From Octopus bimaculoides (taxonomy: Eukaryota): 64,000 nt of DNA. The notes beneath the pieces are model-generated. The model was not told the DNA's origin and searched no databases. It was given only the letters and a program-made list of their open reading frames with translations. Location: the NCBI RefSeq assembly GCF_001194135.2, contig NC_068981.1, forward strand, positions 8,992,142-9,056,141. The letters are read 5' to 3'. Within the stretch, counting starts at the first letter, position 1. Every line of letters starts with the position of its first letter. Of the stretch, positions 529 to 62,915 are shown piece by piece. A program made the translations under genes and the position numbers.

Positions 529-741
529 CAGATGTTTCTGCGGACTGTCCTTGAAACAATCCAAACATATTTCCACTGGCTTTACTGACAGCAGCCATTT
601 TGGCAATTATTGGCAGATTGTGAATGACAAAACTGACTTCGTTTTTCTGAATTTTTGACAAGTTCTTTGCATGACCGATTAGGCCAAAGCCTGTGACATC
701 AGTGGCACCATGTGCATTGTATTTGTGCATCAGTCTAGCAG
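529..741 (-). CDS. SEPHS2: SPS coding exon 6: (A)[70 protein letters not shown](G)
   Basis: ORF track 482-892; acceptor tttccag, donor GTAGGT. Confidence 0.96.
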
Positions 742-3700
742 CTGGAAAGAACAACAATAAAATAAAGCATTCAAATGAGATGAAGCCATTAATAGTTACA
801 GAATGCTCAAAATTAAATTTAGAATTCATTTTTAAAAATACAATAAAAAAAAAAGAAACAATGAGTCCAAATTTCTTTTTAAAAAGGAACACTAAGTGTT
901 GTTGATATTATACAATAAACTCTCTGGAAAAGGTAAATTTGGATACATTCTTGTCAAGAGAACAAATATTGTAAAAGTGGAAGATTTAATAAAAGCAAAG
1001 GAGAAATCTTAACTCTGACTGTAGAAGCGAGAGGAACATAATAAGATGGAATTCATATACAGTAGCGTGGTTGAGTCTATTATCATTGTAAGGTAAATCA
1101 TGTAATATACAGTAGTGTGGTTGAGTCTATTATCATTGTAAGGTAAATCAGGTTATATACCAGTGCGATTTAGTCTCGACATGCTGCACATTGCTCTGTG
1201 ATAAGCTTTACGAATATCATCTTCACTGACAACCATTTTGAGCCGAGACATTCGTTCAGGTTCATCTAACCATTGATGGGCATTCACAGCAACCTGAGTA
1301 CCCAGGGGCTTGGTCAAAACAAGAACGTCACCCACTACAGCATTGTCTGGCCTGAAAGAAATAAAGTGATGAAAATAAGCATTTTTTTTAAAATTCTTTT
1401 CTTTATAAAAAGAGTTCAATATTAGAAGGAATCATCTAGAAGGAATAATCTGTCAAGATTTCAGCCCAGCTAATATGGATTTTAACTGTAGAAGCACCTT
1501 TGAAATGCCCCGTCTAGGATTTAACTATGCACATACATTTATATGTTTAACTAATCAACTGATAAAGAAAAACATTATTTACAAACAACAAACTGTTTCC
1601 AATAGTAATGAAAATTCTAAGAAAACATTTTAAATACTGAATAAAACAAAAGTTTAGCCAAAATTAAAGAGAAAGCAAAGCATTCTGTAAGAAAACCTTC
1701 AGGAAATAAAAAACAAAAAGAAACCACTGACCACCTTCAGAGTGGACTGTAGTAAGATTAACTAAACATGTTATGTACTATAATTAAATGATGGTGAGAG
1801 ACAAGGAAACCAGTTGGGAGCTTGTACCAAATGTTGTTAGACTCTTTTCGAAGATAGCTATGTCAGGGTCCAAACAACTTGTCTGGAGTTGGTACGTCCA
1901 TTTCATTCTACCTGTCCCTCTCTCCTTCCCTCTTACAAGTTGTTTTATGGAAAAACCACTTTCTATAAGACATTACGAAAGTGTGGAGCCAATCTTCTAA
2001 TTGCAAGGAAAATATTTTACAATTTTTGGAAAATAATTATTGATGATATTAAATGAGACTGTTGAAGAAATCATCATTTTACATCTGTTTTCCATGCTGG
2101 CATGGGTTGGATGGTTTGACCGGCTCCAGTGCCTGTTCTGGTATGGTTTCTATGGTTGGATGCCTTTTCCAACACCAACCACTCCACAGAGTATACCATA
2201 GTGCTTTTTATGTGGCACCAGCACCAGTTCTGTGGCAGACGGTTCTTCTTGAGTACAGCAGTGCACCAAATATCTCGGTCATTAGTCAAGACACAAAGTA
2301 CAGCTACGGGGAATTAGCTTTGTAAAAATGTTTTAGTCGAAAGTGTTCCCAACTCCATGGTTCTGGGTTCAGTCCCACTGTGTGACACCTTGGGCAAGTT
2401 TCTTTTACTACAGCCTTGGACCAACCAAAGCCTTATGAGTTGATTTGGTAGGCGGAAACTGAAAGAAGCCCATTATGTGAATGTGTGTTTGCTTGTCCTC
2501 CACTACTACTTGACAACCAGTGTTGGTTTGTATACGCCCCTTGTAACTTAGCAGTTTGGCAGTAAAGAATGATAGAGTAAGTAACAGGCTTGAAAAAAGA
2601 AAAAGTACTGTGATCAATTCATTTGACTGAAAAGTCTTCAAGGCGGTGCCCCAGTCTGGCCGCATTCTAACAACTGAAACGAATAAGATATAAAAGAGAA
2701 TAAATAGATTTGTTTCCTTACATTATAAATTCATTTGGTTGACATACTGTAGTTGCTACTCCACCAATGGTCAGCCAGGGATTAATAACTGTTTGACCAC
2801 CTGATACCTGGGTGCCAGCATCTTCAGCCAAGTCCTTCAGGGATTTACAAGAGATTCAATGAAAAAATTACAAGAAAATAGGNNNNNNNNNNAGGGGGGG
2901 GGGGAACTAAATATCTCAATTTCTCATTCATCATCATCTATCGACTACAGATTACAACTTGTATTTCCATAGGTCACATTTTATTATTGGTGTCTTCAGG
3001 TCATGGTTAGTAATGGGGGGAGGAGAAGCTGGCAGAATCATTAGCATGCCAGGAAAAATACTGGCATTTCATCTGTTTTTATGCTCTGAGTTCAAATTCC
3101 ACCAAAGTCGAGTTTGACTTTCAACCTTTCGAGATCAATAATATTAAATACCAGTTGAGTACCGAGGTTGATGTCACTGAATCAGCCCCTTCCCCAAAAT
3201 TGCTGGCCTTGTGCCAAAATCTGAAACCTATATTTCATTGAATACTAACTGTACAACAGCCACAAATGTTTTAAGTCTACTTTTATATGACATATTATAC
3301 TGGAAATATTCTATACTTTCTACCTTCTGTCCATGTACCCAAAGGGCTGGACCAGGTCCCTACTTGTTAATGTTGGCAGGAGACACATGTTGTCATCTCC
3401 ATCAGTGATAATATCCTATAATTATCTGTAGTTGTTTCACTAAAGTCACACTAACTGCACCACCACCACCACCACCTGTGTGTCCAAGTTCAGTTACTGA
3501 TGTAGTCATGGTGCTTGATCCAGCAGAAAGTCTGGCAGAGTGAAAGACGAGATCACGGTCTGTACAGTACGAGATCTGGATACCAGGTGGTGGTTTTGGT
3601 CATCACAACTCCAAACATAGATGAGTGAGACTAAAGAATGGACATGTAGAATTGCGTCCCCACTCTTTTCTAACATGATCCAGTTCTCGCTTCCAAACCA

Positions 3701-6700
3701 TTTTACTTCAACTTTGATGCTGTCACACAAAGTGTGTGATTTGTAATCATTCAACCACGGTAGTGGTTGAATATATTCCTAAGTCCACCATTTCGTCAAT
3801 CACAGCAGCTTCCAAGCTTCACCACTAATTCAATTCTCAACTAAATTGCAAACCATTAATAGTTTTAAAGAGGACACCTCCTCAGCTACACTTTGGCATA
3901 AATAGTTTGAGATTTGGTTCAGTAGAAAAAAAGTTAGCATATGTGAGACCTCAAGTGGGCAGTAAGGCAGGTATCCTTCTTCAATTAACATAAATTTTTA
4001 AATTTTTAAATAAAACTATACTTTTCTTAGGCTTAAATGATAGAAAAATGCATGAGGAATTCAGAATTGTTAGTTGCATTGAACAAAAATTAGTAGAAAA
4101 AGAGTTATGAGGTAAAATGTCATGAAATATAAAATAAGTGAGGAAGTAAGGGAGTAACACTCTGACCAATAAGAATATATTTCTAAAAACTATTACTTCA
4201 AGTAAAGTAAAGAATAAGAAACTATTGCGGGTAAAATTAAAATTTGAATATTAAAACTTATTTTAATATAGTTTACAAATAATACTATACTTATTTAAGT
4301 AGAATTTGGCTAGTTTACTACCTTAAATACAGAAAAAAAGTGACTAATTAGACAAACTTACAAATTAGCTGAACAGTTTTGTACAATAAATTTAAAAGAT
4401 GAGAACTGTAAAGAGTGATAAATTAGAAGAACTGGCATTCTTTGCCAAAATATTTTAAGTAAAAAGTTTCTTATTCTTTACGAGAAGTAATAGCTCGTCC
4501 TATACTTTTTCAGGTGTAATAACTTGTCCTGTACTTTTCCAGGTTTATAATTTTAAGAATATTACTTTTCATGCTCACATTTTTCCATGTAATAACAGTT
4601 CTTTGAAGTTCCACATTTGGTTCTTTCCACAGTTATACAGTTGAAAGAAATGAAATGGTGAGGAATACAATTTAGTGATCAATATTCCAAGTGCTGACTG
4701 AATCAACACCAACCCTCAATTATAGATGCCAGGGTTTCTAATACCTCATTCAAGAAAACAATACTAACCTTAAAGTCAATGGGACTCATAACAAAAACAT
4801 TCTTTTTTTATGGTTGTGTCACATAAATGGCACACATGCTGGTGGTACATAAAGTGTACCGCTGGGGCATTGGGCCTCACAGAGACAAAATGGCCAGAGG
4901 CAATGACCAAAACCTTTGGCATTATGTTGGGCTTGAGAAAAAGACCCATCAAGCCGAGCAAAATTGCAGTCGTGGCAGATACCAGTGTCATGCAAATGGC
5001 ACTCGTGCCGGTAGCACGTAACAGCACCCATTAAACTCTTGGAGTGGTTGGCGTTAGGAAGGGCATCCATGCCAAATCAGACTGGTGTGTGGTGCAGCCT
5101 TCCAGCTTACCAGCCCTGGTCGAACCATCCAACCTATCTATGCCAGCATGGACAACAGACATTAAACAATGATGATGATGATGATGATGATGATGATATT
5201 GATGGTAACTTTTCTTCAAATTGTTAAAATGTTTAATATTTCCCTCAAGATTTACATCAGAATTCTTGCAGCAACCAAACCTGAAATTCCAAGTTTCCTT
5301 TTCTTATATTCTTAGAAATTCTGTAAACCTTTTTTTTGCATTCAGATTGTTCTGTCAGATGTAATTCTTATTTATTCACATTATTTTGAATTAATGACTG
5401 TATTTGATGGCCTAAAAGATGCCCAAGTCGAGTGCACAGGACGCACCCAGCCTAGGCTATACTTTTGTAAAATAAATTACCACTAAAATAATGTTTTAAT
5501 TCCTCCACTTTATGTTATTAGCGGTAATTAGAAGCAATTTATTGCATCCACATCCGATATAAACATACCATAGACAGATGGCAGCATGCGTTTTGTAAAC
5601 AGACATACCGTAGGCAATTGGCAACGCCCTGCCATCCACGAACCCTCCCCTTCCCCCCTCTGATGTTACCATGTTCTTTCTTATAAAAATATAGAATTAG
5701 AAATGCATTCATGAGTTTTGAGCCTACACTGAGTGCATTGGACGCAGGGGAGGGGAGATTAAAGCCATTTGGGGGTAAAAAAAAAAGGCACGTCTTGCAG
5801 GCCATCAAATATGGTATCTACAAACTTGTAGCTTTGTGATTACGAAGATGTGATAGTTTATTTTTCTTTTAGGATGACATTCTAGGGAAGGTGTGAGAGG
5901 CCAGATCTGGCTAGTTTGAACATAAAACAAATAGAATATTTCAGCTAGATATTCTATTTGCTAAAGGGTTAAAATTAATATTTCCCAAATCCCCGGATTC
6001 CTTTCTAATTGTTTCATCCATCAAACTCTTTAATTTTTTTAGCTTTCAGATTACTTTTATCCAATGTAAAACAGATTTATTCGCATTGTTTTGAATTAAT
6101 CATAAATTATTTCATAACCTTGAGATTTCAATGTGATTACTTACTTTTAGTATGACATTGTAGGGTAGGTGCAAGAAGCCTAGTGTCAACATAAAGCAGG
6201 TCAAATATTTGGGCCTGATATGGCCCAGTTTAAATGCCAAAGGGTTAAAGCAATAAATACCACAGTAAACAACAGGCAGATATATTAATTAAGAGTATCT
6301 TTCTAATTAATTCACTAATTTAAAATGGAAACAGTAATAAAACTGACCTTGAAACCACGCATCATAATTGGAACGACCACATCTCTTTCTTTTTCTGTCA
6401 TTTTATTACTGACACCAAGCAACATGAGCATATTGTCACATTCGGTGACGCCCATTGCATACAAGTCACTTAACACATTGGCACAAGCAATTTTACCCTA
6501 AAAAAAAAAAGCAAAAGAAAAAAAGGAAACGGAATTATTTACATGAAATCATTTTTTTAATTCAATTCAGATGATAGTCATTGCACATCCAATGAAAAAT
6601 AGACATCACACTTTTAAGAGATTTACTCTTTGGGAAGTGTTGTCCCACTAATGAGAATAGATTAAAGAAACTTGGTCAATGTTACGTGTTCTATCTTGTA

Positions 6701-9700: not shown

Positions 9701-12353
9701 CTTTTACTGAATGGATATCAATAATAGGATAAGAGAATCCATGGTGAGCAATGTTAATGACATACAATAGTAATTATCATTTAATGAGAAGCAACAGGTC
9801 AAACTTCTTGATGAAGAACTTCAGATCTGAGCAAAAAAAGAAGACAGAAGTCACAAGACGACACTGCTCAACAGATGAAGGGAAAGAACTGGCATAAAAC
9901 AGCTCTAAATAGGGTAGGCAATGAGAACCAATTCCTGCAAATTGTAGCATTTGACAGCTAAACTGATGTAGCCACTAGAACTTTACCTAGCAATACCTGC
10001 AAGTGCAGATTAACTAAACCATAGAATCCCAACACCACCACCAAAAAAAAAAAAGGGGAAGCAATGGGGTACACTGAGATTAATTAAATGACACTGTAAA
10101 GTACTTCTTCCTTCAGCCTCTTTATCCCACACGTCTCTTCAATGAACCAGAGAAAGAATTTAATGCTAATTCACTAATTAGGTTATTAATGATATATATC
10201 TAATGAGTACCTTCTGCTTAAACAACATACTAAATGCAGACGACTGAGCAAAAACAAATTGTTTTCCAACACGCTCATGGCTAATTTTCCCAATCCTCGT
10301 TAATTTTTAATCCACCCCTCTCCCCAAATATTCGAATTCCTTATCTATTGGATCTCTTTGATTTTTTAAACAGCTTTTTTTTCTTTATTTCACTAATTCT
10401 TGTTTACATTTTTCCAAAAGAAATTCTCACATAATCTCAAGTTAACAAAATCATTTTTTTACATTATCTTATTCTTATATCCATTACTTAAAACATTGAT
10501 TTGGATAAAACTGAAATATGGATTTCAAATTTTGGCACAAAGCATGCAAGTTCAGAGGATAGCAGGGGCTGGGGGGCAAACTGAATGCATCTCCCACGCA
10601 ACTGGTACTTATTTTATTGACAGACAAAGACTGACTAAACGCCTCTAAACATTTTGCCTGGCATGCTAACAATTCTGCCAGCTTAGATAAGATTGAAACA
10701 TTGAGAAGTGTTTAGCCATGAGCTGTTTATTTTCCAGTCTTCTTTAAAAACTTTTGGGTATAAAAGACTTGACAAGTTGTTCTGTTGTTGAAACATAAAA
10801 GAGGGAAAAGTGAGACGGATTAACCTCTACGGCTAAAAATATCTTAAGGACTACTTACCATCATGTAAGGGTCATCTACAAGGGGATAGAAAAAGTCCGT
10901 TGTTTGTACCAATGAGAGCCCACCGTGCCGCAGGGGTGTCACACTTGAGTCCATGCCAATTCCTACAAAAGAAAATCAGTGCAAAACAAAATTTCAATTT
11001 CACTGAACAAATAAGAATATTTTTTTCTTTTAACATGAAAATTAAAAATCAAAATCGAGATGAGGGTGTGGAGTTTCAAAAGGACTCTAAAATGGCAATT
11101 CCCATATTAGAACTAAGAAGTATCCAGAGAAAATTCAAGGAAAAATAAAAATTAGTAAATACAAAGAAAAATAAAGTCAGCAGTTTGGAATATGTGGCAC
11201 ATAAAAAGCATCCATTACGCATCTAGCTGTAGAAACTTTGCCAGATTAGATTGGAGTCTGGTACAGCCTTCTGGCTTGCCAGTCCTCAAACTGTCCAACC
11301 CATGCCAGCATGGAAAGCAGACGTTAAAAGATTAAAATATTTACTCAGTTCATACAAATGCTCGTGGTTTGTTGTCCTTTCAAACAACTGCAAATATTTC
11401 AACAAACAGCAACACTATTTCTTACGAAGTGATTCTCTTTAAACATAAAACTTAAATGAAATCTTAACTCTAATTACTTCTCTCCATTTTCACACAGCTT
11501 GAAAAATGTTGAAAACAGTAATGGTCAGACATCCCAATATCCAAAGATACAAAATATATTTCAATGTCCCCAGTTGTGAGAGGTACAAGTGTTAGGCAAC
11601 ATTGTTCAACTCATCAGACTATTATTATTAATCTCTATTATTATTAATACACTTTCAGGCCTTGTGCTTCTGTTACAAACCATTAAATATCTGTTTTATT
11701 ATCACCAATGATTGTTTTCCCTCAGCAGTTTAGAGATGTCTTCAAAATCTTTCGTTTTCCTCTTTCAATAAACAATAAAAGAGGTTTTAAAGAGAGAGTT
11801 GCCTTTATTTCCATAAAGGGTCTCTGAACCCTTTAGCATTTAGACTACACTGTCAAATGCAATGCTTATTTATTCACACTGCTTTGAATTAATCATACAT
11901 TATTCTGTAACTCCAACATTTCAATGATGTGATTGTTTATTTTTAGAATGACATTGTAGATAGGTGTGAGAGGCTGGATCTAGTCAGTTTCAATGCTTTG
12001 CAGAGCTTTTCCTGACAAGTTCTGTGTTCAAATCCAGCTTAGATCAACTTTGTCTTTTATTACTGCAGGGTTAATATAATAAAGTACCAGTCTAGTGCTG
12101 GGGTCAACAGTAATGACTAACCCCCAAACCCTCGAGCCCAAATTAGAAACTATTATTATTAATACAGTTCTATATTTAAGAGATGAGGAATTATTAACAT
12201 TATTTATATTATTTACATTTGACGGATATTTGTCCTCATCTTGTTTGTTGTTAACACAACGTTTCGGCTGATATACCCTCCAGCCTTCGTCAGGTGTCTT
12301 GGGGAAATTTCGAACCTGGGTTCTCATTCCTAACGATGTTACTATTATTATAA

Positions 12354-15300: not shown

Positions 15301-18300
15301 TCTAATTTGGAGTAGAAAGACAACTCTTGTTAATATATACATGGAATTGCAACAAACAAAACAAATACAAGGTCACTAACAGGTCTGGATAGGAGACTAG
15401 AGGAATCAACATTTTATTTGGAAGCAAGATTTGTGACAAGAAGAGCATGGAACTATAGAAAGAAAAAAAACTGTCTCATTAACTTTTGTCCAACCCATAT
15501 CAGCATGGAAACGTAGCCAGTAAAACAATTATGATCACAAACACACATGCATAGTTGTAAATATGTTTTGAAACATATGTCATAAATTTATCAAGTGGGA
15601 ATTATAAAATAGGTCAATGGAGGAAAAGAATGCTTTCTGATTTCAGTGGTGGGACGAGGACGAGGACAAGTGCTTTTATGTAACAACATTCAGTTTCTGA
15701 GTTAAGAAAGAAATTAATAAAAATACAAATTGAATCCAAGAAACGGTTAAAGATATTTCTGAAAGATAATTCCAAAGCCACTGTGATGGCATTTTGTTGC
15801 CAGAAAGAAGTCAACTAAATCAGACAAACTAAGGACGTAAAATGTTTATATTCAGATCGTATTGTCTCTGTGGGTGACACACAACACTCAACCTAAATAG
15901 AAAAAGCGGCCAAATCTCCCACAAAATATATTGGACCACATTTAAGAAAAGATGCATTAGATAGTTAAATCTGAATAAAAGATGGGATGGTCACAACTGG
16001 AAAGTCTCTGATCATAGATCAACTCAATTACAACTAACATAGAGTTATATAGTTTCAGTGAACCTTGGTACAATCAGAACCAGAACAATTTCCTACGTGA
16101 TCAATGAAAACGACTTGAAATAAAAGACCAGCTAAAATAAGCCTGTTTCTATCTAAAATGAGAATTCCAACAGAAATCTTGCTGCTCCATTCATGAAAAC
16201 ATGTAACTCCACAAGATATGCAATTAACATATTTATTACTTTTTCCAGATATCTTTACCCCATTACAACTGGAAAAGAAAAATGGACACCATTTCATTCA
16301 CAAGAGACATTTGATTTGAATTTTTCTGTTTTTAAATTCTTCAAAAACAATAGTCAAAAAAATATAGCCACCTGCAATGGAGAATCAGAAATTTCAATTC
16401 CAAATGTGAAAGCAACAACTCTGACAACAGTTCTGATAGGAAAAGTAAGTAATTTTTACCAAAATCAGAATGAGAAAAGGATTTTTAAAGTATTCTTNNN
16501 NNNNNNNATTTGAATTTTTCTGTTTTTAAATTCTTCAAAAACAATAGTCAAAAAAATATAGCCACCTGCAATGGAGAATCAGAAATTTCAATTCCAAATG
16601 TGAAAGCAACAACTCTGACAACAGTTCTGATAGGAAAAGTAAGTAATTTTTACCAAAATCAGAATGAGAAAAGGATTTTTAAAGTATTCTTTTTTGTAAA
16701 AGATTTTTCAGATAAGGCAGGAGCCAGTCACAGTCTTTCCAATGAATCAAAGGCAAAGAATGGTTTTATATACTTTTTTTTCCTTTTCAATTATTCCAAA
16801 CTGTTACACAGAATATAAACGAAGGAAAAACAAACAATAGTTTCTGATCTCCTACATGCCTAAACGAAATTAAGACACTTTTGCTCAAAACATTTTTATG
16901 GACATGAAAACTACTGGAATATAGAGAAACCTTCCAGTATTTATGACACAAGACAAGATTGTTTGAAATCAAGTCAGTTCTTACATAGAAAAGACACTGG
17001 CAATACACCAGTGAGTGGACTAGAAAATTATGAATCCTTACTGAAGAACCTTCCTGGTAGTGTTTATAGCAGAGAGGTGACTATCAATAGAAGATGGCAT
17101 AATGGGATATAAGGGCCAGGTACATTTCAGACAGTATATGCTAGACAAACCCACAAAATAGGGTATCAATACTTGCGAGATTAGCAAGCTAAGTATTGAG
17201 TACTATTATGGGTATAATCACCATCAGCCTCATCATCATTTAACGTCCACTTTCCTTGCTGGCATGGGTTGGACAGTTTGACTGAGGACTGGTGAGCTAG
17301 AGGCTGCACCAGGCTCAATCTGATTAGGCAAAATTTCTACAACTGGATGCCCTTCCTAACTCCAACCACTCTGAGAGTGTAGTGGGTGCTTTTACATGCC
17401 ACCGGCATGAGGGCCAGTCAGGCGGTTCATACAGGGAAAAAAGCACAGCATGGCGTAAGGTATGATGCAATCTGGAAATTATCACTTCCATATCGTAACG
17501 AGGGTCATATATAATTTTTTGATCAATTTTTCAGTTCAAATTTACAGATTTAGAAACTAAGCTGTGGTAACATGGAAAAGTGCTACAATGATCGCAAAGA
17601 AAAGAAAAAGGATGGTCACTGGACTATAAAAAAAAAAGCCAAATTACAAAAATAATAATCTAATGGCAGAAAGGAAATTTGTTAGTGACCACATTACAGT
17701 GGTAAGAGATAAATCAATTTTCTATCCACATGTGCTCAAAAACATGTGGATGGAAATGGCGCATCATATGTGAAACCCAGTCAGACAAGTTGCATGTGAA
17801 AGCATTTTGATGATAAATAAAGTTACAAAGGTTTTATAAAACTATATANNNNNNNNNNNNNNNNNNNNNNNNNNNGTGGATGGAAATGGCGCATCATATG
17901 TGAAACCCAGTCAGACAAGTTGCATGTGAAAGCATTTTGATGATAAATAAAGTTACAAAGGTTTTATAAAACTATATTTATAAATCTATATTCACAATTA
18001 TTTTAGAATTAAGTAAAACTGAAAAAAAGTAAACCATTTGGCATCACTTGAAAAAGACAATTTAGATAGAAAATATAGATACACAGAGTTTCTAACAGCT
18101 GTTTCTGGTCCTTGTGGGGGTTGCTGAGTAGCTTACAAAACAGGAAAGGAAAAGAAAGAAAGAGGAAAACTACTCCCTTGACTAAATGGGAGGGTATTTG
18201 AGAGAGTAGAGAGATGGATGACTAGGACAAGCAGAGGTAGCCATGTTTTCGTTAGATTTGGAATGATTTTGATAATTTTCAATTGTAAACTTTATTAATT

Positions 18301-24300: not shown

Positions 24301-25758
24301 GCAATCAACACTCAATTTTCTCAGCAACAGCCAAACTACAAAGGTGTGGTACTCTACCAAAGGATTTTTACAGTTCATTAAATCCTAGGTAGAGTGGTTT
24401 ATTGTTAACTGACAACACCTGTAGTTATCTCAGTAGAAATAACATTCTTGCAAAAGATGATCTATCAATTTGATACCTCTAAGTTGTCTCCTTCTCTATT
24501 ACTACATCAGTTATAGTGGATAATCTTTCCCTGGATTATAGAAGTCACTAGTCCCTGCCCCTACAGGCAGCTTATCCCTTAACATCCACCTGCTTCCATT
24601 TTCATATCTTTCGTCACACTTTCGACCATCAACTTTTCACACCGTTTAGTCCCTGTTCCCTATCACATTGCCTCTTTCAGGAATCTCATAATAATATTTC
24701 AAAGACTTTTTTTTTGTTTGTTTTATAAAAAATGTTCGATTTTATTTATGAATAGATGAAAATCGATAATTTGATAGACTTGCATCGAATAGGGCCAAGC
24801 AAGATAGTAAAATTATTAACTTCGAATAGTTTTTTTAATAAAATTGTAAGCAAAAGATGCTAATTTTTTTTTACATAGGTAATTAAAAATGTAGAAAATT
24901 GCAGCAACGTTGAAATAATGTCTTTTAAAAGTTGGCTAATTTATGCCAAGTTTACGATGACGTAAGTCTAGAATTGAAAAATTGCACCAAGAAAAGAGGG
25001 GAAGAATATGAAGAGGGAAATGAAATAAAAGAAATATTANNNNNNNNNNNNNNNNNNNNNNNNNNNNNNNNNNNNNNNNNNNNNNNNNNNNNNNNNNNNN
25101 NNNNNNNNNNNNNNNNNNNNNNNNNNNNNNNNNNNNNNNNNNNNNNNNNNNNNNNNNNNNNNNNNNNNNNNNNNNNNNNNNNNNNNNNNNNNNNNNNNNN
25201 NNNNNNNNNNNNNNNNNNNNNNNNNNNNNNNNNNNNNNNNNNNNNNNNNNNNNNNNNNNNNNNNNNNNNNNNNNNNNNNNNNNNNNNNNNNNNNNNNNNN
25301 NNNNNNNNNNNNNNNNNNNNNNNNNNNNNNNNNNNNNNNNNNNNNNNNNNNNNNNNNNNNNNNNNNNNNNNNNNNNNNNNNNNNNNNNNNNNNNNNNNNN
25401 NNNNNNNNNNNNNNNNNNNNNNNNNNNNNNNNNNNNNNNNNNNNNNNNNNNNNNNNNNNNNNNNNNNNNNNNNNNNNNNNNNNNNNNNNNNNNNNNNNNN
25501 NNNNNNNNNNNNNNNNNNNNNNNNNNNNNNNNNNNNNNNNNNNNNNNNNNNNNNNNNNNNNNNNNNNNNNNNNNNNNNNNNNNNNNNNNNNNNNNNNNNN
25601 NNNNNNNNNNNNNNNNNNNNNNNNNNNNNNNNNNNNNNNNNNNNNNNNNNNGTTGACACACACACACACACACACACACACACCTGCCAACGTATAGAGA
25701 CACACACACACCTGCCAACACAAACACACACCTGCCAACGTATACACACACACACACA

Positions 25759-25790
<32 letters not shown>

Positions 25791-26269
25791 CCTGCCACCA
25801 CGCGCTGAAAGCCGCCATTATGGAGAGGAGAGCATCGAAAGGGAGTCACATTAAAAAACCTATTTATGTCTTACAATGATATGGTAGACACCAAATCCTA
25901 CTTCGAAATGATAAAATAAAGTTAGGAAAATGATTTGCGACCAAAAGAAACCAGCTGGATTCTTTACTTCAGCCAGATCGGCGAAATGAAAGCCGATTTG
26001 GTTGTCAATGCCGAGGTAGTGGCAAGAATGTCTCGTTTCCGATAGAAAGAAAAAAATTAGTGAAGCCATTTCTTACCTATTCGAGGAACACTGGCAATGT
26101 ACTGGAAGTGTTCTGACTCCTGGGCACTACTGTCCTGTTGTAGTCCCTCAAGAAGCTTGAGCAGAGCTTCCTGGGGGACCTTACACCCTCATCCCTTCAG
26201 GTCAGCATATTTGGTGAGTCGGAATTTCGGATCCAAATCGTGAGCGACAGGATCGAAAGGTCGCCGCAT
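529..26269 (-). CDS. SEPHS2: Selenide, water dikinase (selenophosphate synthetase, SelD/SPS family), Sec(UGA)-type, 3'-partial. join(26077-26269, 10859-10962, 6348-6497, 2722-2834, 1161-1351, 529-741); last exon lies left of the window
   Basis: Six GT-AG exons (193, 104, 150, 113, 191, 213 nt) splice in frame (phases 1,0,0,2,1,1) to give 321 codons containing [61 protein letters not shown] and [13 protein letters not shown]. The symbol reflects the Sec codon; the protein sequence itself also closely resembles vertebrate SEPHS1. Confidence 0.96.
1055..1160. repeat. 50-bp tandem duplication abutting the SPS exon 5 donor
   Basis: Units start at 1055 and 1105 with 4 differences; third start (atatac, 1155) is the true donor. 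Confidence 0.9.
1161..1351 (-). CDS. SEPHS2: SPS coding exon 5: (M)[63 protein letters not shown]
   Basis: ORF track 1153-1419; acceptor tttcag, donor GTATAT. Confidence 0.96.
2722..2834 (-). CDS. SEPHS2: SPS coding exon 4: [37 protein letters not shown](M)
   Basis: Acceptor ccctgaag (AAG type, weaker), donor GTAAGG. Confidence 0.93.
3022..3225 (+). mobile_element. Second SINE family (central domain resembles the Meta-SINE domain, from memory); copies near 10515-10685(-), 12000-12150(-), 32575-32790, 49215-49340(-) and 62135-62290
   Basis: Recurring gagttcaaattcc..gaggtcgactttgcctttcatcctttcggggtcgataaa..agtaccagtt and ggccttgtgcc 3' part. Confidence 0.65.
5325..5972. mobile_element. piggyBac-like MITE (CCCTTT...AAAGGG|TTAA), interrupted; further copies at 6031-6248 and 11829-12000
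   Basis: Same internal sequence in three copies; right ends aagggttaa at 5972 and 6248. Confidence 0.65.
5398..5814. mobile_element. MITE with CCGTA-type termini (pogo/Tc2-like), nested in a TTAA-type MITE
   Basis: ctgtatttgatggcctaaaagatg versus cgtcttgcaggccatcaaatatgg; TA on the right flank. Confidence 0.7.
6348..6497 (-). CDS. SEPHS2: SPS coding exon 3: [50 protein letters not shown]
   Basis: Acceptor tttttag, donor GTCAGT, phase 0-0. Confidence 0.96.
7917..8562 (+). mobile_element. tRNA-type SINE with an internal (TG)/(TA) microsatellite; related copies near 2330-2700, 18950-19190, 28130-28260, 33915-34070, 51110-51270 and 54150-54270(-)
   Basis: A/B-box-like head (ggcgtggctgggtggtaag...ggttcaggccc), central ttgggcaagtgtcttctactatagcc, tail ending gaaacaagtaaaag. 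Confidence 0.75.
10859..10962 (-). CDS. SEPHS2: SPS coding exon 2: (G)[34 protein letters not shown]
   Basis: Acceptor ttttgtag, donor GTAAGT, SPS motifs. Confidence 0.96.
12253..12298 (-). ncRNA. Minimal type I hammerhead ribozyme motif (Penelope type, palindromic stem III), intact
   Basis: Minus strand reads GACAC CUGACGA A GGCUG(GAGGGUAUAU)CAGCC GAA AC GU U GUGUU: stem I GACAC/GUGUU, stem II of 5 bp, loopless ACGU stem III, GUU cleavage triplet. Confidence 0.72.
12448..12490 (+). ncRNA. Hammerhead motif, defective copy (3-nt deletion at the cleavage site / stem I)
   Basis: GACAC CTGACGA A GGCTG...CAGCC GAAACGT GTT; lacks TGT relative to the other arm. Confidence 0.6.
14613..15171. mobile_element. 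MITE with about 40-bp TIRs and TA target duplication (Tc1/mariner type)
   Basis: ttcggatcttttttaaaacgggggccacatttttcattaa versus ttaatgaaaaatgtggcccccgttttaaaaaagatcccaa; additional internal inverted repeat aaccaatcactgac / gtcagtgattggtt. Confidence 0.85.
16314..16691. other. Assembly artefact: identical 184-bp duplication across a 10-N gap (likewise about 17746-17977 and 36115-36165). Gaps at 2883-2892, 8110-8233, 16498-16507, 17849-17875, 25040-25651, 36135-36144, 42087-42423
   Basis: 16314-16497 equals 16508-16691 on either side of the Ns. Confidence 0.8.
20600..22345 (+). mobile_element. RTE-clade LINE relic, reverse transcriptase region with stops and frameshifts
   Basis: ORF pieces [41 protein letters not shown] (YADD at 21585-21596) and C-terminal RRRPRKT. 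Confidence 0.9.
23440..24620 (-). mobile_element. Old, highly degenerate RTE-like LINE fragment
   Basis: Minus-strand translation gives [22 protein letters not shown], resembling the RTE C-terminal region. Confidence 0.5.
25652..25800. repeat. (AC)n-CTGCCAAC minisatellite next to a 612-N gap
   Basis: Four cacacctgcca(a/c)c units. Confidence 0.85.
26077..26269 (-). CDS. SEPHS2: SPS coding exon 1: [27 protein letters not shown](TGA)[37 protein letters not shown]
   Basis: ATG at 26269. The ORF track stops at 26189, but homology continues past the TGA (GCKVPQ) to the donor G|GTAAGA at 26076. Confidence 0.94.
26142..26191 (-). promoter_or_regulatory. UGA recoding cassette: Sec codon (26191-26189), GGG-UGU hexamer and Sec-redefinition-element-like hairpin (26180-26142)
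   Basis: mRNA reads UGA GGGUGUAA GGUCCC C CAGGAAGCU (CUGCUCA) AGCUUCUUG A GGGACU: 6-bp and 9-bp stems separated by one C.A mismatch, 7-nt loop. Confidence 0.8.
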
Positions 26270-26488
26270 CGACAGATCTCGAGGTTCCTCCGGTGGGCAT
26301 GCTTCCTGAACATCTAAAAGTAAAAGGAAAAAAATTCTAATTCTACTCAACTGAAAAATGACACGAGCAAAATTTTGAAAAGAGGAGAAAATATTGACCG
26401 GACATAATTGCTTGTTCGTTTCTGTGAGCCACGTTATGGCGTCGTCGAGAGAATGGTGAGAGAAAGACCCGGATGGAGAGGGACTCAC

Positions 26489-26765: not shown

Positions 26766-26798
<33 letters not shown>

Positions 26799-26870
26799 CG
26801 TGTGTGTATGTATGTGTGTGTCTGTGTATGCATATATTTATATTTATATTTATATATACAGTATACAATT
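26570..26870. repeat. Complex (TA)n/(TG)n microsatellite immediately upstream of the SPS 5' end
   Basis: Direct reading. Confidence 0.9.
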
Positions 26871-27144
26871 TGATTTGTGAGTTAAAGAGATGTTTATTAT
26901 TATTTGGCTATTTTTACTTTTAATAACAATAATATTTAATCTAATGTGAGAATAGGGGAAATTATATTCATTATGTTATATAATTATATTAATTATATGT
27001 GAAATAATTGCAGATACCCCCCCATTCCCCCACCACACCACTCCTTGTCCTTTACCACTATAATGCAAAGCCTTTTCTTCATAAACATTCTTACTGATAT
27101 TTCTGAAATATACGGTGGATTAATTTCATTGTGACGCAATACAC

Positions 27145-28449: not shown

Positions 28450-29340
28450 CAGAGAAGAACCTCTTCTATGAGGATCTCCTGTAAATTACCTCAACATAAA
28501 GGACATAGACCATGTTATCATGTTGGATAATGCCAGAATGCCTTCTATGGCCTACAGGAAAGATCAGGAATTAAGGCCCACAGGGCTCAATCATAAGAAA
28601 TGGCTTATTTGGAATATGAATTTCAGGAAACTGGCAAACTAGTTGTTCATCAATCAATCAAACAAATACATTGGGATGGTTATAGTTCCAAGAGCCTTTT
28701 TTGGTAACAAATGGTCCCTTGTTCGTCTATAGAGAATGATGCTGCAAAGTTGTGATGAGTGACCCATAAATTCAGAGGATTTGCAAAAAGTAGAAATAAA
28801 TAAAGAAAGCAAGTTTACGATTTGAAAAGATGGATTCTTAGGAATTATTTACTGCAAAGTTTACACATTATTAATATGTTTGTCACCACGATGACAACTG
28901 CAAAGAGAAGAGGCTTGTTATGAACACTCTTCATGGTATAGACAATACTCCAGCACACACACACACACATCCTAATCATGGACCAAATTTCTTGGGTCTT
29001 TGATTTTTATCAAAGTTCCTGGCTCCAAGTACCATTCTTTTGTTTCAGCCCATGGGTCAGTAACTGTAAGCCAAGTTTTTTTTCTTTCTAAATATCCTTA
29101 AAACACCTATTTAAGATGCATTTGGAAGTGACTTTGTCTGGGAATTTCACATAAAAAGGATTTTGGAATAGTTGCTTTAACATTGCAGATGTACGTTTAA
29201 GAGAGAAATGAAGAAGAGAGTTTTCTTCAAGCTGCTTCAACTTTGGTAAGCATTGTGAACTGATGTTGTCTCTTCAATGGATTTTGAAATATTTGAGAAC
29301 AGAGGAGGTTTTGGACTACTTTCTGAGCCTGGAGGTGAAG
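28450..29340 (+). mobile_element. pogo/Tigger-type DDE transposase relic
   Basis: Frameshifted motifs IDNTPAH, FLAPSTILLFQPMGQ and KDFWNSCFNI resemble MDNAPAHP, FLPPNTTPLIQPMDQ and EFWKEHFNI. Confidence 0.65.
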
Positions 29341-30589: not shown

Positions 30590-31360
30590 CTGGATTTGTA
30601 ATGTCAGTGTGCACACATGACAGAGTGTAAACGCCCTGAGAGAAATGTTAAACATAAGAAGCATCAGATGTGACATGCAAGAGAGACGTTTGCGTTGGTA
30701 TGGTTATGTACTATGGATGGACAAAGAGAGCTGTGTGAAGAAGTGTCATTCTCTAACAGTGGATGGAACCTGTAGAAGAGGTAGACCCAGGAAGACATGG
30801 AATGAGGTGGTGAAGCATGACCTTTGAACGTTGGGCCTCACAGAGGCAATGACAAAAGACGAAGACCTCTAGAGATATGCTGTGATTGAGAAGACCCGGC
30901 AAATAAAGTGAGTGGACAGCTGTAACCTACACCAGTGTCGCATAACCAGCCCACTTAAAAAGTACCTTTGAATCGTCAGGCGACCTGCTGTGCCTGAGGA
31001 GACCTATTGAGTCAAGTAAAGTCAAAATCAAAATCAAATCAAACAACAATCAAATGGAAATTGTAGTTGTGTCTGATGCCAGTGATGTCTGACTGGCTCC
31101 CGTGCTGGTGGCACGCAATAAGCACCATTCATGCGTGGGTCGTTGCCAGTGTCACCTGACAGGCTCCTGTACTGGTAGCATATAAAAAGTACCATCCGAA
31201 CATGGCTGATATCAGAGTGGTTGGTGTTAGGAAGAGCATCCAGCTGTAGAAACATTGCCAGATCAGACTGGAGCCTGGTGCGGCCTCCTGGCCTGCCAGT
31301 CCCCAGTCAAACCGTCCAACCCATGCCAGCATGGAAAACGGACGTTAAACGATGATGATG
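30590..31360 (+). mobile_element. 5'-truncated RTE LINE: ORF end, 3' UTR and (ATG)n tail
   Basis: ORF 30645-30827 (RRLRWYGYV...RRGRPRKTWNEVVKHDL) runs into the common 3' UTR/tail repeat. Confidence 0.88.
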
Positions 31361-34300
31361 GTGGTAAGTTATACAGGGGAATCTGTTTGAAACTCGCTCC
31401 AAAACTGTCTTTACGCTTTGTCTGGATGTTTAAACTTCCAGTAGATTTCCTTCTTTCAAAGCTTTGTCTGGCTCCCTTCATTATATGTAATGGGTTAAAT
31501 CGAAAACGAATGTAAATTAAGTAAAATACCAGCTTTAAAAGTGTGTATACATCTTTTATGGTGGTGGTGGTGCGGCGGACACCCGTATTTATGAAACCTG
31601 CCTTAATTGTTACACCAATGCACATCCGTAGTTCTGAAAAGCGCACCAATTGATATAACCTCGCCTCTCTGTAATAAAAAGTGAGGGAGACATTCTTATT
31701 TTCCTGTCTCGTTCACCACGTGTTTGTTTCTGCCGAAATATTTGGGTTTTTAAATAGAAATTGTCGTTAATCGACATTTCCATATTTTACTACATTTGAA
31801 AATTTAACACTTTGTATATTGATTTTTACGTAGATTTTTTTAAAACAAATTATTTTGCCGTCGTAAATCTCATCAACGTTTTATGCAATCATAGAAAAAA
31901 TTAATTTCCCTCACAAATCTTCAATTAATTTTAATTTTAATGCTGTCAGCTTTTGTTTAAAAATCTAACTTCCACCAGAAAGCACCTCCACTGGATTTGA
32001 TCTCTATTATCGATGTAGTAATAGTAAAATTGATATACCCAGTATTTTAAAATAAATTTCAGATTTCAGAAATGCTAACAGAATTCCGCTGTTTAAACAA
32101 CACAAATAGAAGGCCAACTGGTTTTTTAAATGTCTATTTATCAACAGCTCACACCATAAAACATTGTTTTATTTGGGTAGGGGGGAATGTAGCAGAACAG
32201 GATTTCGATTGGGAAAATTTATTTATCAATAAAGGAGACACAGTAACAAGAGGGGCGAGAAAGAGAGAGAGAAAATAACATAGTGTATGACGAAGTAACA
32301 AGGAGTTCGCCAAGTTGCCAATTTAGTGAAACCGTTACTGACAAGGGAGGTAATTTACACTAATTCACACACAAAACGAGACTTTTTAAAATTTCTTTTC
32401 AACTTAAAATTTCCTTTAAGTGCTTGTAATTTATTTTTTGTAACCGATCTGAAGGGGGGAAATCGCAGGGAAACTTTAATAAACGATCGATTTAACAGAT
32501 CTTTTTTTTAAATCAGCTATTAAATAGCAGAAATTGTTGCCGTTGTGTAAAAACGACTAATTAACGGTTTCAATGTTGATTTAATGCAGCGAGCTGACAC
32601 GCCGGATAAATTGCTCACCAGTATTTCGTCTGTCTTTATGCTTTGGGTTTAATTTCCGCCGAGGTCGACTTTGCTTGTCATTCTTTCAGGGTCGATAAAA
32701 TAATACCAGTAAACTACTGGAGTCCATTTAATCAATTAGCCGCCTCCCCCGAAATTTCAGGCCTTGTGCCAGATATTCAAATTTAAAATATCACATCTCT
32801 ACCCTCAGTAACTTAACTAAAAACGTGGCCTTTATTCCGGTTCAACTTGCTGACAACAAACGAAAAAATTATTTTAGTAACTTGAAATATTTAATAATTT
32901 CTAAATTATATCAAAATGTTATATAATAATAATGATGATGATGTGTATTAGTTACATATTCTGTTAAGACCTAATTTTTTTCAATAAGCCGGGTCAACCA
33001 ATTTGCTAATTTCACAAACTTTTTTTTTTTTTTTTTAAATCTTATATTGGACCTGTTTTAAAAACGAAAAATAAAAACTGCGTAAGTTTACACGATAATG
33101 ATTAAACTGAAAACTTTGTATGTTGTCAGAGTTTGGTGGGGGAAAATAAAAACAATTTACATGCCACCCTTCATCCCGAAAATGTTTAAAAGCCAATTAT
33201 TTCGTAATATCTGGAATTATTTAATATTTTCAAGCGATTTTATAAATATCTTCCTCCAACATTGATGACCGTTTAATACCTGTTATACTCCTCGTTGTTG
33301 AAGTTCACCTTAATTACAACCTAGCTAAGTTAAAACTACCACTCGGTTCCCTTCAACAACAACGCAACATGTCGTTGTCGTCAAGTCACAGAAACTGTAA
33401 TGTAGTTAGAATTAGTTGGTTTATAAAATGATTGTACATTTCAAATTATTTTTTTCCACTTTTAATATATCGCTTTCCAATCTAATAAAGAAGATGCTAT
33501 TTAGCTACTGCTATTACAATTACCATTGAACGTAAGTCATAAACTCTTTCTCTCTCTCTGTGTTGTGGTGGTGCAACGAATTTTATTGATTCCGACTTTA
33601 AAATAGAGTTTTATTGACAAAAATTATACGAGTGGGGAGATAATGATGAAATATGATAAAGAAATAGGCCAAAAACATAGCGGTTATGTATCAAGGGTTG
33701 TTACGTGAGTAGAGATAACCCACATACGCAAAAAGAAAATAGACCAAGACTACATGACACACGAAATTGATAGGACTGAAGTGTGTGTATGTGAGGTGGG
33801 GAAGTTAATTATTATATTTCCATCCCCGTCTGAGGTATTTCATGAATATATTCCAGTACATGACGGGTACTTTATCTAAATGTAAAGGACCATTTCAAAA
33901 CAGTACAAGCATATTGTCTGAGTGTGGCTATGTGGTTAAGAAGTTGGTTTCTGAACACAGTTTTGGATTCAGTCTCACTATATGACACCTTGAACAAAGA
34001 TCTATCTACTAACCAACTATTACATTAGATTTAGTAGATAAAAGGTGAAAGAAGCCCATATATATATATATATATATGATTTCTTTTACTTGTTTCAATA
34101 ATTAGACTGCAGCCAATGCTGGGGCACTGCCTTGAAGAATTTTAGCCAAACGATATATATGCTTTTAATTGTTTCAGCCCTAAGTCTGTGGCCATGATGG
34201 AGCACATCTTTGTCTTGACATTGGGTGATAGTCATAAGCAAGTGTTGGTCATACAAGCAGTATAGAAAATATAATCTTGCTTGGAAATGAGTAATAATGG

Positions 34301-36962: not shown

Positions 36963-62915
<25,953 letters not shown>

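What the first reader, a model, noticed from the sequence alone, without database searches (positions are those of the whole stretch)
26189..26191. In-frame UGA at the catalytic residue: a selenoprotein SPS likely to be mis-annotated
Seen: KG-TGA-GCKVPQ at codon 27 with intact frame and splice sites on both sides. Established: SPS2/SelD carries Sec or Cys here and SPS1 paralogues carry Thr, Arg, Gly or similar; the ancestral metazoan gene is thought to have supplied both functions through Sec insertion versus non-Sec readthrough. Inference: this may be such a dual-output gene. Standard gene callers would truncate it or skip this exon.
Basis: partly seen in the sequence, partly recalled or inferred. 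Interest (0 to 1): 0.7.

Follow-up and report, generated by a model that had tools for sequence, protein, structure and literature searches.

The report
Octopus selenophosphate synthetase selenoprotein gene
The in-frame TGA is real and encodes selenocysteine in the octopus selenophosphate synthetase gene (SPS2/SelD), a known kind of selenoprotein gene that automatic annotation truncates and mislabels as "inactive"; whether it also makes a second, non-selenocysteine product is a published but still untested idea.

Summary
On the minus strand, TGA (26191..26189) is the only in-frame stop across seven window exons of an SPS/SelD gene, and it sits exactly at the catalytic Sec/Cys column. The window is from an Octopus species. 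An octopus RNA-seq contig and eight other UGA-type SPS mRNA sequences also carry TGA there. The true start is probably a 7-nt coding mini-exon upstream, which makes Sec residue 44, not 27. The last exon and 3'UTR lie left of the window. In O. sinensis and Argonauta, the orthologous 3'UTR ends in a canonical type-2 SECIS. It has an invariant AUGA/GA core, one compensatory double change in each of its three helices, and a conserved AATAAA 40-46 nt downstream. A stem-loop (SRE) starts 11 nt after the UGA. The UGA is followed by GGG-UGU, the published readthrough hexanucleotide. RefSeq models in O. sinensis (315 aa, "inactive selenide, water dikinase-like") start after the UGA exon, so the mis-annotation prediction holds. 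The "dual-output" idea restates Mariotti et al. 2015. The octopus gene shows their marker set (UGA + hexanucleotide + SECIS), but nothing here shows a non-Sec product. Verdict: an ordinary member of a known kind, from a lineage absent from the parts of that study's dataset I could search.

The parts
26399..26405 (-). Probable first coding mini-exon (ATGTCCG). The start codon is 26405-26403, and the GT donor is at 26398-26397.
   Evidence: Joined to exon 2 it gives [24 protein letters not shown], matching squid-like [24 protein letters not shown]. The 5'UTR resembles squid transcripts. There is an in-frame stop 38 codons upstream.
26314..26398 (-). Intron 1 (85 nt, GT...AG)
26077..26313 (-). 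Exon 2, which encodes the N-terminal catalytic loop and contains the Sec codon
   Evidence: The splice junction to exon 3 is confirmed by RNA-seq contig L002.
26189..26191 (-). UGA selenocysteine codon (residue 44 from ATG 26405; 27 from the internal Met at 26269)
   Evidence: It is invariant in 9 distinct UGA-type SPS mRNAs. It aligns to the R/T/L/C column of SPS1 and Cys-SPS homologs.
26183..26188 (-). GGG-UGU hexanucleotide directly 3' of the UGA (the readthrough-associated motif of Harrell 2002 as used by Mariotti 2015)
   Evidence: The flanking codons GGA/GGG/UGU are invariant, whereas only 7 of 28 codons with a conserved amino acid are codon-invariant.
26142..26180 (-). SRE-like stem-loop starting 11 nt after the UGA (6 bp + 9 bp, 7-nt loop)
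   Evidence: -23.7 kcal/mol, z about -2; 92% of cells paired in 7 sequences against 41-56% with slid partners, plus one compensatory pair.
10859..10962 (-). Exon 3. The RefSeq O. sinensis model starts here, at MDSSV.
6348..6497 (-). Exon 4
2722..2834 (-). Exon 5
1161..1351 (-). Exon 6
529..741 (-). Exon 7, the last one inside the window. Exon 8, the stop codon, the ~2.2-kb 3'UTR and the SECIS lie beyond window position 1.
   Evidence: In O. sinensis L001, exon 8 is 26796-26981, the SECIS 29027-29097 and the AATAAA at about 29136.

Best explanation
This is the octopus orthologue of the ancestral metazoan selenophosphate synthetase SPS2 (SelD), itself a selenoprotein. The UGA at 26191..26189 (minus strand) is decoded as selenocysteine in the N-terminal catalytic loop (...LKG-U-GCKVPQ...). 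Decoding is directed by a type-2 SECIS at the very end of a long 3'UTR that lies outside the window. A stem-loop (SRE) starting 11 nt after the UGA probably assists. Shown here: the gene structure, the UGA and its conservation, family membership, the SECIS in two sister octopod genomes, the SRE, and the truncated public annotation. Inferred: that the window species has the same SECIS, and that Sec is actually inserted.
For: Gene model with a single in-frame stop. SelD equivalog TIGR00476 at 272 bits (cutoff 125), AIRS and AIRS_C domains, and human SEPHS1 structure 3fd5 at E=1e-156. The UGA is present in octopus RNA-seq contig L002 with the predicted splice junctions. Nine distinct UGA-type SPS mRNAs carry it. 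Coding conservation continues upstream of the UGA. SECIS: it is the top-scoring candidate within 5 kb after the stop in O. sinensis (-25.1) and in both Argonauta loci (-22.3), at orthologous positions. Background is 2 unrelated hits at or below -20 in 264 kb. The AUGA and GA motifs are invariant. 90% of cells pair, against 18-48% with slid partners, and each of the three helices has one compensatory double change. A conserved AATAAAACACCAGTTTC lies 40-46 nt downstream, and interspecies similarity ends soon after. SRE. The published framework expects SPS2-Sec with SECIS and SRE in unduplicated metazoan lineages (PMC4561486).
Against: The 3'UTR of the window species is not in the window, so its own SECIS is unseen. 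Rfam SECIS models did not hit the octopod element even at E<=10. The Argonauta element has CCA instead of GAA in the bulge where the conserved AA normally sits. The O. sinensis helix 2 has two A.G mismatches. No SECIS was found in the squid-like transcript contigs, though these lack poly(A) tails and are probably truncated. Nothing confirms that transcripts extend the ~2.1 kb to the SECIS; that rests on conservation and the poly(A) signal. The Sec machinery (tRNA-Sec, SBP2, eEFSec, PSTK, SepSecS) was not examined, and the window holds no tRNA.
Confidence: 0.9

Rival explanations
1. Dual-output gene, as an extension of the best explanation rather than an exclusive rival. Besides the Sec form, a fraction of ribosomes read the UGA with a standard amino acid, with no help from the SECIS. 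This would yield an SPS1-like isoform that carries the second (SPS1) function in a lineage that never duplicated SPS.
For: Mariotti 2015 and its Supplement S6 propose exactly this for unduplicated metazoan SPS2 genes. They name the GGG-UG[C/U] hexanucleotide together with a SECIS as the indicator. The octopus has UGA-GGG-UGU. The three codons flanking the UGA are invariant in 9 sequences, whereas only 7 of 28 comparable codons are. The SRE is present. No other cephalopod SPS appears among the 120 best homologs, although that list still admits vertebrate SPS1 at 69-70% identity. Proximal AATAAA hexamers lie upstream of the SECIS, which would permit SECIS-less mRNAs.
Against: There is no direct evidence of a readthrough product here or, per the paper, anywhere for unduplicated SPS2. 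The hexanucleotide also encodes the conserved Gly-Cys of the active-site loop, and its nucleotides may be constrained by Sec decoding or by the structure itself. The paralog search covered annotated proteins only, not the genome. SECIS-less transcript ends are unproven, because the contigs lack poly(A) tails.
Confidence: 0.2
2. SPS1-UGA type, as in Hymenoptera: a SECIS-less gene whose UGA is read through without Sec in an organism lacking selenoproteins.
For: It shares the UGA-GGG-UGU hexanucleotide and a nearby stem-loop.
Against: A conserved SECIS with compensatory changes sits at the end of the orthologous 3'UTR in two octopod genomes. Only a single stem-loop downstream of the UGA is predicted, not the three-stem HRE with the UGA at the apex.
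Confidence: 0.03
3. The UGA is a true stop, or the gene is a pseudogene or assembly error. The functional product would be the N-terminally truncated 315-aa protein annotated in RefSeq.
For: Public annotation of O. sinensis and Argonauta starts at MDSSV, downstream of the UGA exon.
Against: The region upstream of the UGA is conserved as protein between octopus, squid-like and more distant lineages. The UGA is conserved in 9 sequences, including RNA-seq contigs. There are no other stops or frameshifts in 338 codons. The truncated model would lack the catalytic loop that aligns to residues 3-60 of human SEPHS1.
Confidence: 0.02
4. Cephalopod A-to-I RNA editing converts UGA to UGG (Trp), producing a non-Sec isoform.
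For: Coleoid cephalopods edit mRNAs extensively (general knowledge). A stable helix lies next to the codon. Two database homologs show W at this column.
Against: Both 'W' proteins have TGA in their contigs, so the W is an artefact of the gene caller's genetic code. All ten cephalopod RNA-seq contigs read TGA at consensus level. The edited A would follow a G, a context that ADARs disfavour (general knowledge). The UGA itself is not inside the predicted helix.
Confidence: 0.03
5. Ciona-type alternative exon (SPS-ae): a second copy of the exon with a sense codon gives the non-Sec isoform by alternative splicing.
For: The mechanism is known in Ciona. A 15-kb intron follows the UGA exon.
Against: tblastn with the exon peptide, at E up to 100, finds only the UGA exon itself in the 64-kb window and nothing in the 10 kb of O. 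sinensis intron held.
Confidence: 0.02

Closest known systems
Unduplicated metazoan SPS2-Sec, e.g. Capitella teleta SPS2 (Mariotti et al. 2015, Genome Res 25:1256; PMC4561486)
   Same: UGA at the catalytic column. The same GGA-UGA-GGG-UGU-AAR-GUC context (the Capitella sequence appears in the supplement). An SRE-type stem-loop just after the UGA. A SECIS in the 3'UTR. No SPS1 paralog detected.
   Different: It comes from a cephalopod mollusc. None of the mollusc genera I searched for (Lottia, Crassostrea, Aplysia, Octopus) appears in that paper's main text or held supplements. The SECIS is unusually distal (about 2.1 kb after the stop in O. sinensis, 1.5 kb in Argonauta), immediately before the poly(A) signal. 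The gene is spread over more than 27 kb with a 15-kb intron after the UGA exon.
Hymenopteran and paraneopteran SPS1-UGA
   Same: In-frame UGA followed by the GGG-UG[C/U] hexanucleotide, with RNA structure next to the UGA.
   Different: Octopods have a conserved SECIS, while SPS1-UGA genes have none. No three-stem HRE with the UGA at the apex was predicted.
Vertebrate SEPHS2 (Sec) and SEPHS1 (Thr)
   Same: The same fold and domains. The protein is about 70% identical to human SEPHS1 (3fd5, E=1e-156). Like SEPHS2, it has Sec at the catalytic site and a 3'UTR SECIS.
   Different: One gene in place of the two vertebrate paralogs. In sequence it is closer to the slowly evolving SPS1 proteins, as the paper reports for unduplicated SPS2 genes.
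Bacterial SelD with Sec or Cys (TIGR00476)
   Same: Equivalog-level match (272 bits) and a catalytic G-[U/C]-G-C-K loop.
   Different: Eukaryotic recoding uses a 3'UTR SECIS rather than a bSECIS directly after the UGA. The downstream stem-loop here is at most a helper element.

Membership tests
SelD / selenophosphate synthetase (TIGR00476; Pfam AIRS + AIRS_C) | Match to the SelD equivalog model above its curated cutoff, plus the two AIRS domains | tested here: met
   TIGR00476 272.2 bits (cutoff 125). PF00586 51.5 bits and PF02769 35.6 bits, both above cutoff. This holds even though the last ~60 residues are outside the window.
SelD / selenophosphate synthetase | N-terminal catalytic loop with Sec or Cys followed by G-C-K | tested here: met
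   ...ADLKG-U-GCKVPQ... aligned to homologs; G43, G45, C46, K47, V48 and P49 are invariant.
Eukaryotic selenoprotein gene (SPS2-Sec) | In-frame UGA at the position homologous to Sec/Cys, with coding conservation on both sides | tested here: met
Eukaryotic selenoprotein gene (SPS2-Sec) | [quoted passage not shown] | not testable with these tools
   The 3'UTR lies beyond window position 1, and no collection available here returned the window species' own downstream sequence.
Eukaryotic selenoprotein gene (SPS2-Sec) | [quoted passage not shown] | tested here: met
   O. sinensis L001 29027-29097 and Argonauta L011/L012 have a canonical architecture, three compensatory double changes, and a conserved poly(A) signal just downstream. 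Caveats: Rfam SECIS models are silent, and the Argonauta bulge reads CCA rather than GAA.
Eukaryotic selenoprotein gene (SPS2-Sec) | Sec-decoding machinery in the genome (tRNA-Sec, SBP2, eEFSec, PSTK, SepSecS) | not tested
SPS1-UGA (SECIS-less readthrough gene of Hymenoptera) | Absence of a SECIS | tested here: not met
   A conserved SECIS is present in octopod orthologues.
SPS1-UGA (SECIS-less readthrough gene of Hymenoptera) | GGG-UG[C/U] hexanucleotide after the UGA | tested here: met
   definition.
SPS1-UGA (SECIS-less readthrough gene of Hymenoptera) | [quoted passage not shown] | tested here: not met
   Only one conserved stem-loop, downstream of the UGA, is predicted.
Hypothesised dual-function unduplicated SPS2 (Mariotti 2015) | UGA + hexanucleotide + SECIS in one gene | tested here: met
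   The SECIS is shown in sister species only.
Hypothesised dual-function unduplicated SPS2 (Mariotti 2015) | No SPS1 paralog in the same genome | tested here: inconclusive
   Among the 120 best database homologs, the only named cephalopod entries are the truncated models of this gene (P0045, P0055). SPS1 proteins at 69-70% identity still make that list. The genome itself was not searched.
Hypothesised dual-function unduplicated SPS2 (Mariotti 2015) | An actual non-Sec readthrough product | not testable with these tools
   This needs ribosome profiling, mass spectrometry or reporter assays.
Ciona-type SPS-ae (alternative exon gives a Gly isoform) | A second, sense-codon version of the Sec exon in the same gene | tested here: not met
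   N-gaps in intron 2 leave about 0.6 kb unseen.

The most novel reading that the evidence does not exclude
The single octopus SPS gene makes two proteins from one UGA: Sec-SPS2 when the mRNA carries the distal SECIS, and a non-Sec SPS1-like readthrough isoform promoted by the invariant UGA-GGG-UGU context and the SRE. The balance would be set by alternative polyadenylation that includes or drops the SECIS. The SECIS sits about 2.1 kb after the stop, directly before the distal poly(A) signal, and proximal AATAAA hexamers lie upstream of it.
Probability: 0.15. Interest if true: 0.75.

Novelty: new member of a known kind. Interest (0 to 1): 0.3.

Why it matters
In practical terms, the RefSeq models of this gene in O. 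sinensis, and the Argonauta models, lack the catalytic exon and are named "inactive". Anyone using those proteomes would wrongly conclude that octopods lack a functional selenophosphate synthetase. The gene model, the Sec codon and the SECIS given here correct that. In conceptual terms, the octopus gene adds a mollusc lineage to the set of unduplicated metazoan SPS2 genes that carry UGA, the readthrough hexanucleotide, an SRE and a SECIS together. It is therefore one more usable test case for the ten-year-old hypothesis that the ancestral SPS gene supplied two functions from one codon. The very distal SECIS suggests a concrete, checkable way in which SECIS inclusion could be regulated. None of this is surprising to a selenoprotein specialist.

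Tried and rejected
1. Rfam scans found no SECIS family hit. This covered gathering thresholds on the window and L001/L002, and E<=10 on the O. sinensis downstream 10 kb, plus E<=1 on nine transcript contigs. The L016 element that my scan later scored as a canonical SECIS was also missed, so I treat this negative as insensitivity rather than absence.

2. My first crude SECIS pattern scan was unspecific: 26 hits in 355 kb. I replaced it with a constrained-folding scan that has a measured background.

3. A deeply conserved ~35-nt 3'UTR block shared by octopus and squid-like mRNAs looked like a SECIS lead, but it has no AUGA/GA core or stem. Rejected.

4. A covariance model built from the octopod SECIS (R1) recovered only the octopod loci. 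It is too sequence-specific to find the element in squid-like or other lineages.

5. No convincing SECIS was found in squid-like contigs L003-L010. These contigs lack poly(A) tails, so the result is uninformative. The strict scan also missed a plausible SECIS in the complete 3'UTR of L020, which a relaxed scan found. Negatives from the strict scan are therefore weak.

6. I first assumed the readthrough hexanucleotide was the CARYYA type and absent here. The paper showed the relevant motif is GGG-UG[C/U], which is present.

7. 'W' at the Sec column in two JGI proteins raised the possibility of Trp codons or editing. The contigs have TGA. Rejected.

8. An alternative sense-codon exon (Ciona type) was not found.

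9. MAFFT could not align the distant L016 SECIS with the octopod ones. The pair counts therefore rest on two species only.

10. Two literature searches for a described cephalopod or mollusc SPS or selenoproteome found nothing specific in the held library.
Full report
**Observation.** On the minus strand the window reads ...CTG AAG GGA TGA GGG TGT AAG GTC CCC CAG... (L K G * G C K V P Q). The exon is bounded by an AG acceptor (26315-26314) and a GT donor (26076-26075).

**Gene model.** I used a human SEPHS1 sequence written from memory purely as a tblastn probe. It located six collinear minus-strand blocks. Reading their boundaries gives these exons, all with AG/GT:

| Exon | Window coordinates (minus strand) |
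|---|---|
| 2 | 26313-26077 |
| 3 | 10962-10859 |
| 4 | 6497-6348 |
| 5 | 2834-2722 |
| 6 | 1351-1161 |
| 7 | 741-529 |

The TGA is the only in-frame stop. The gene runs off the left edge of the window, so the last exon, the stop codon and the 3'UTR are not in it.

**Start codon.** Squid-like transcripts read ...[25 protein letters not shown].... The window encodes [21 protein letters not shown] directly after the exon-2 acceptor. About 90 nt upstream it has ATGTCCG followed by GT, preceded by 5'UTR sequence similar to squid and by an in-frame stop 38 codons upstream. The likely model is a 7-nt coding mini-exon (26405-26399), an 85-nt intron, then exon 2. This gives [24 protein letters not shown]... 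and puts Sec at residue 44. 'Codon 27' counts from the internal Met at 26269.

**Organism and public annotation.** The best homologs include P0045, 'inactive selenide, water dikinase-like protein [Octopus sinensis]'. It is 100% identical over the shared part but only 315 aa long and starts at MDSSV in exon 3. An equivalent Argonauta hians model also appears. Its accessions are XP_029635227.1 and XP_036359497.1. The window is 85-94% identical to the O. sinensis locus across introns, so it comes from another Octopus species. The resulting name ('inactive') is misleading.

**Family.** The window-encoded 338 aa match:
- the SelD equivalog TIGR00476 at 272 bits (cutoff 125)
- Pfam AIRS and AIRS_C
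- human SEPHS1 structures at E=1e-156

In an alignment of 26 full-length homologs, the UGA column holds R (arthropod SPS1), T (vertebrate SPS1), L (Helobdella), C (mites) and W (two JGI calls). The two 'W' proteins have TGA in their contigs. This is the residue classification of Mariotti et al. 2015 (PMC4561486).

**Is the UGA real?** An independent octopus RNA-seq contig (L002, SRR3401912) is 97% identical to the window mRNA. It carries the same TGA and the exon 2/3 junction I predicted. In total, nine distinct UGA-type SPS mRNA sequences have TGA at this codon: two octopus, two squid-like and five more distant. A pseudogene or an assembly error is excluded for practical purposes.

**SECIS.** I fetched the O. 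sinensis chromosomal locus with 10 kb of downstream flank (L001) and two Argonauta loci (L011 and L012).
- **Rfam.** Its models found nothing.
- **Constrained-folding scan.** The scan requires an AUGA...GA core, at least 7 helix-2 pairs, an unpaired AA/CC 9-14 nt after the core, and a helix-1 duplex. Its best hit within 5 kb of the stop is at L001 29040 (score -25.1). In Argonauta the best hits are at the orthologous positions (-22.3). The runners-up score -16 or worse.
- **Background.** Over 264 kb on both strands, only two unrelated hits reach -20, both with long loose loops in repeat-like sequence.
- **Architecture.** The element is a type-2 SECIS. It has a 10-bp helix 1, an internal loop, AUGA/GA, an 11-position helix 2, a 3-nt 5' bulge (GAA in Octopus) and a 3-4-bp mini-stem.
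- **Conservation.** Between Octopus and Argonauta the AUGA and GA are invariant. 90% of cells pair, against 18-48% when the 3' partners are slid. Each helix carries one double compensatory change (C-G to G-C, C-G to U-A, U-A to G-C).
- **Poly(A) site.** A conserved AATAAAACACCAGTTTC follows 40-46 nt later, and interspecies similarity ends shortly after. The SECIS therefore sits at the distal end of a 3'UTR of about 2.2 kb in Octopus and about 1.6 kb in Argonauta.

Caveats:
- The window species' own 3'UTR is unseen.
- Argonauta has CCA in the bulge.
- O. sinensis helix 2 has two A.G mismatches.
- A covariance model built from the pair finds nothing beyond octopods.
- Squid-like contigs show no SECIS, but they end without poly(A) tails.
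- The strict scan missed a plausible SECIS in the complete 3'UTR of L020, so its negatives carry little weight.
- In a distant UGA-type mRNA, L016, the scan finds what looks like a clean canonical SECIS about 250 nt after the stop. I use it as a scan-level control only.

**Recoding context.** A stem-loop starts 11 nt after the UGA (window 26180-26142; -23.7 kcal/mol; z about -2 against dinucleotide shuffles). In seven distinct sequences it stays 92% paired (41-56% with slid partners). It has one compensatory pair and six wobble-compatible single changes. Shuffle support is modest, with 26 of 500 shuffles doing as well, as expected for conserved coding sequence. This matches the SRE that Howard 2005 and Mariotti 2015 describe in SPS2 genes.

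The UGA is followed by GGG-UGU. According to the paper, GGG-UG[C/U] is a readthrough-associated hexanucleotide. It is ultraconserved in SECIS-less SPS1-UGA genes, scattered among unduplicated metazoan SPS2 genes, and absent from insect SPS2. In my nine sequences the codons at -1, +1 and +2 (GGA, GGG, UGU) are invariant. Only 7 of 28 codons with a conserved degenerate amino acid in the surrounding 41 codons are invariant.

[quoted passage not shown] The octopus gene meets that marker set.
- **Paralog.** No SPS1-like cephalopod protein appears among the 120 best homologs, a list that still admits vertebrate SPS1 at 69-70% identity. The genome itself was not searched.
- **Alternative exon.** No Ciona-style alternative exon exists in the window or in the O. 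sinensis intron sequence held.
- **Editing.** No transcript shows UGG.

The hypothesis therefore remains as open for octopus as it is in general. The sequence features are permissive and nothing is demonstrated. One additional, speculative observation: proximal AATAAA hexamers (for example +487 in O. sinensis) lie upstream of the very distal SECIS. Alternative polyadenylation could thus generate SECIS-less mRNAs, which is the 'regulated SECIS inclusion' the paper speculated about.

**Novelty and verdict.** None of the mollusc genera I searched for (Lottia, Crassostrea, Aplysia, Octopus) appears in the main text or held supplements of the 2015 survey. I found no paper describing a cephalopod SPS. 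The gene is a new, correctly behaving member of a well-known kind, and a clear case of selenoprotein mis-annotation. That problem is itself well documented (for example PMC12822975, listed). Interest is modest.

Noticed in passing
window 41175-41531 and 48075-48437, minus strand: Two ORF fragments match Pfam Vps35 (PF03635, profile positions 663-711 and 516-590). The retromer gene VPS35 therefore lies upstream of SPS on the same strand, with its 3' end nearest the SPS promoter.
   Followed up: partly
L001 28210-28247 (O. sinensis, ~1.24 kb after the SPS stop; outside the window); L003 1664-1689, L004 1815-1840, L005 1826-1851, L009 2200-2236: A ~35-nt 3'UTR block (AAAGTSSTTTGTCCATGTAAAGATTGGTTGAAC) is 86-96% identical between octopus and squid-like SPS mRNAs, although the rest of the 3'UTR has diverged. 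It has no stem and no SECIS core. It may be a microRNA or RNA-binding-protein site.
   Followed up: partly
L011 and L012 (Argonauta hians BAAFZT010000002.1 and BAAFZT010000006.1): Two loci on different scaffolds encode the identical SPS product, with an identical SECIS and the same downstream neighbour (an SSF-family transporter). This is either a recent segmental duplication or an uncollapsed haplotype in the assembly.
   Followed up: no
window ~16344-16707 and ~17717-17963, minus strand (intron 2 of SPS): In each place the same translated stretch appears twice, on either side of a short N-gap (for example [29 protein letters not shown] twice). This looks like a gap-flanking duplication artefact of the assembly. 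Larger N-gaps lie at about 25040-25650 and about 42090-42440.
   Followed up: no
window ~240-380, 13628-13885, 31263-31400, 52714-53082, 54442-55017 (various strands): Many copies of one interspersed repeat are scattered through the SPS introns and flanks. In translation it reads ...[16 protein letters not shown]...[18 protein letters not shown].... It is probably an abundant octopus SINE-like element.
   Followed up: no
window ~46585 and ~59068, minus strand; also 55626 plus strand: Related copies of a longer repeat, all containing ...GAAAGAAATGAAGCCAG..., surfaced as false positives of the SECIS scan. They are probably retroelement fragments.
   Followed up: no
L016 2296-2341 and L020 2239-2272 (distant UGA-type SPS mRNAs): Rfam release 15 gave no SECIS hit at E<=1 on nine SPS transcript contigs including L016, where a structure scan finds a canonical-looking SECIS. 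L020 was not scanned with Rfam. Its plausible SECIS was missed by my strict scan and appeared only in the relaxed one.
   Followed up: partly
window 26313-26200, minus strand: Exon 2 opens with an out-of-frame ATG (ATGTTCAGG...) heading a 38-codon frame that ends at a TGA overlapping the Sec region. With the mini-exon start this ATG is internal to the CDS and probably irrelevant. It would act as an upstream ORF only if transcription began inside intron 1.
   Followed up: no
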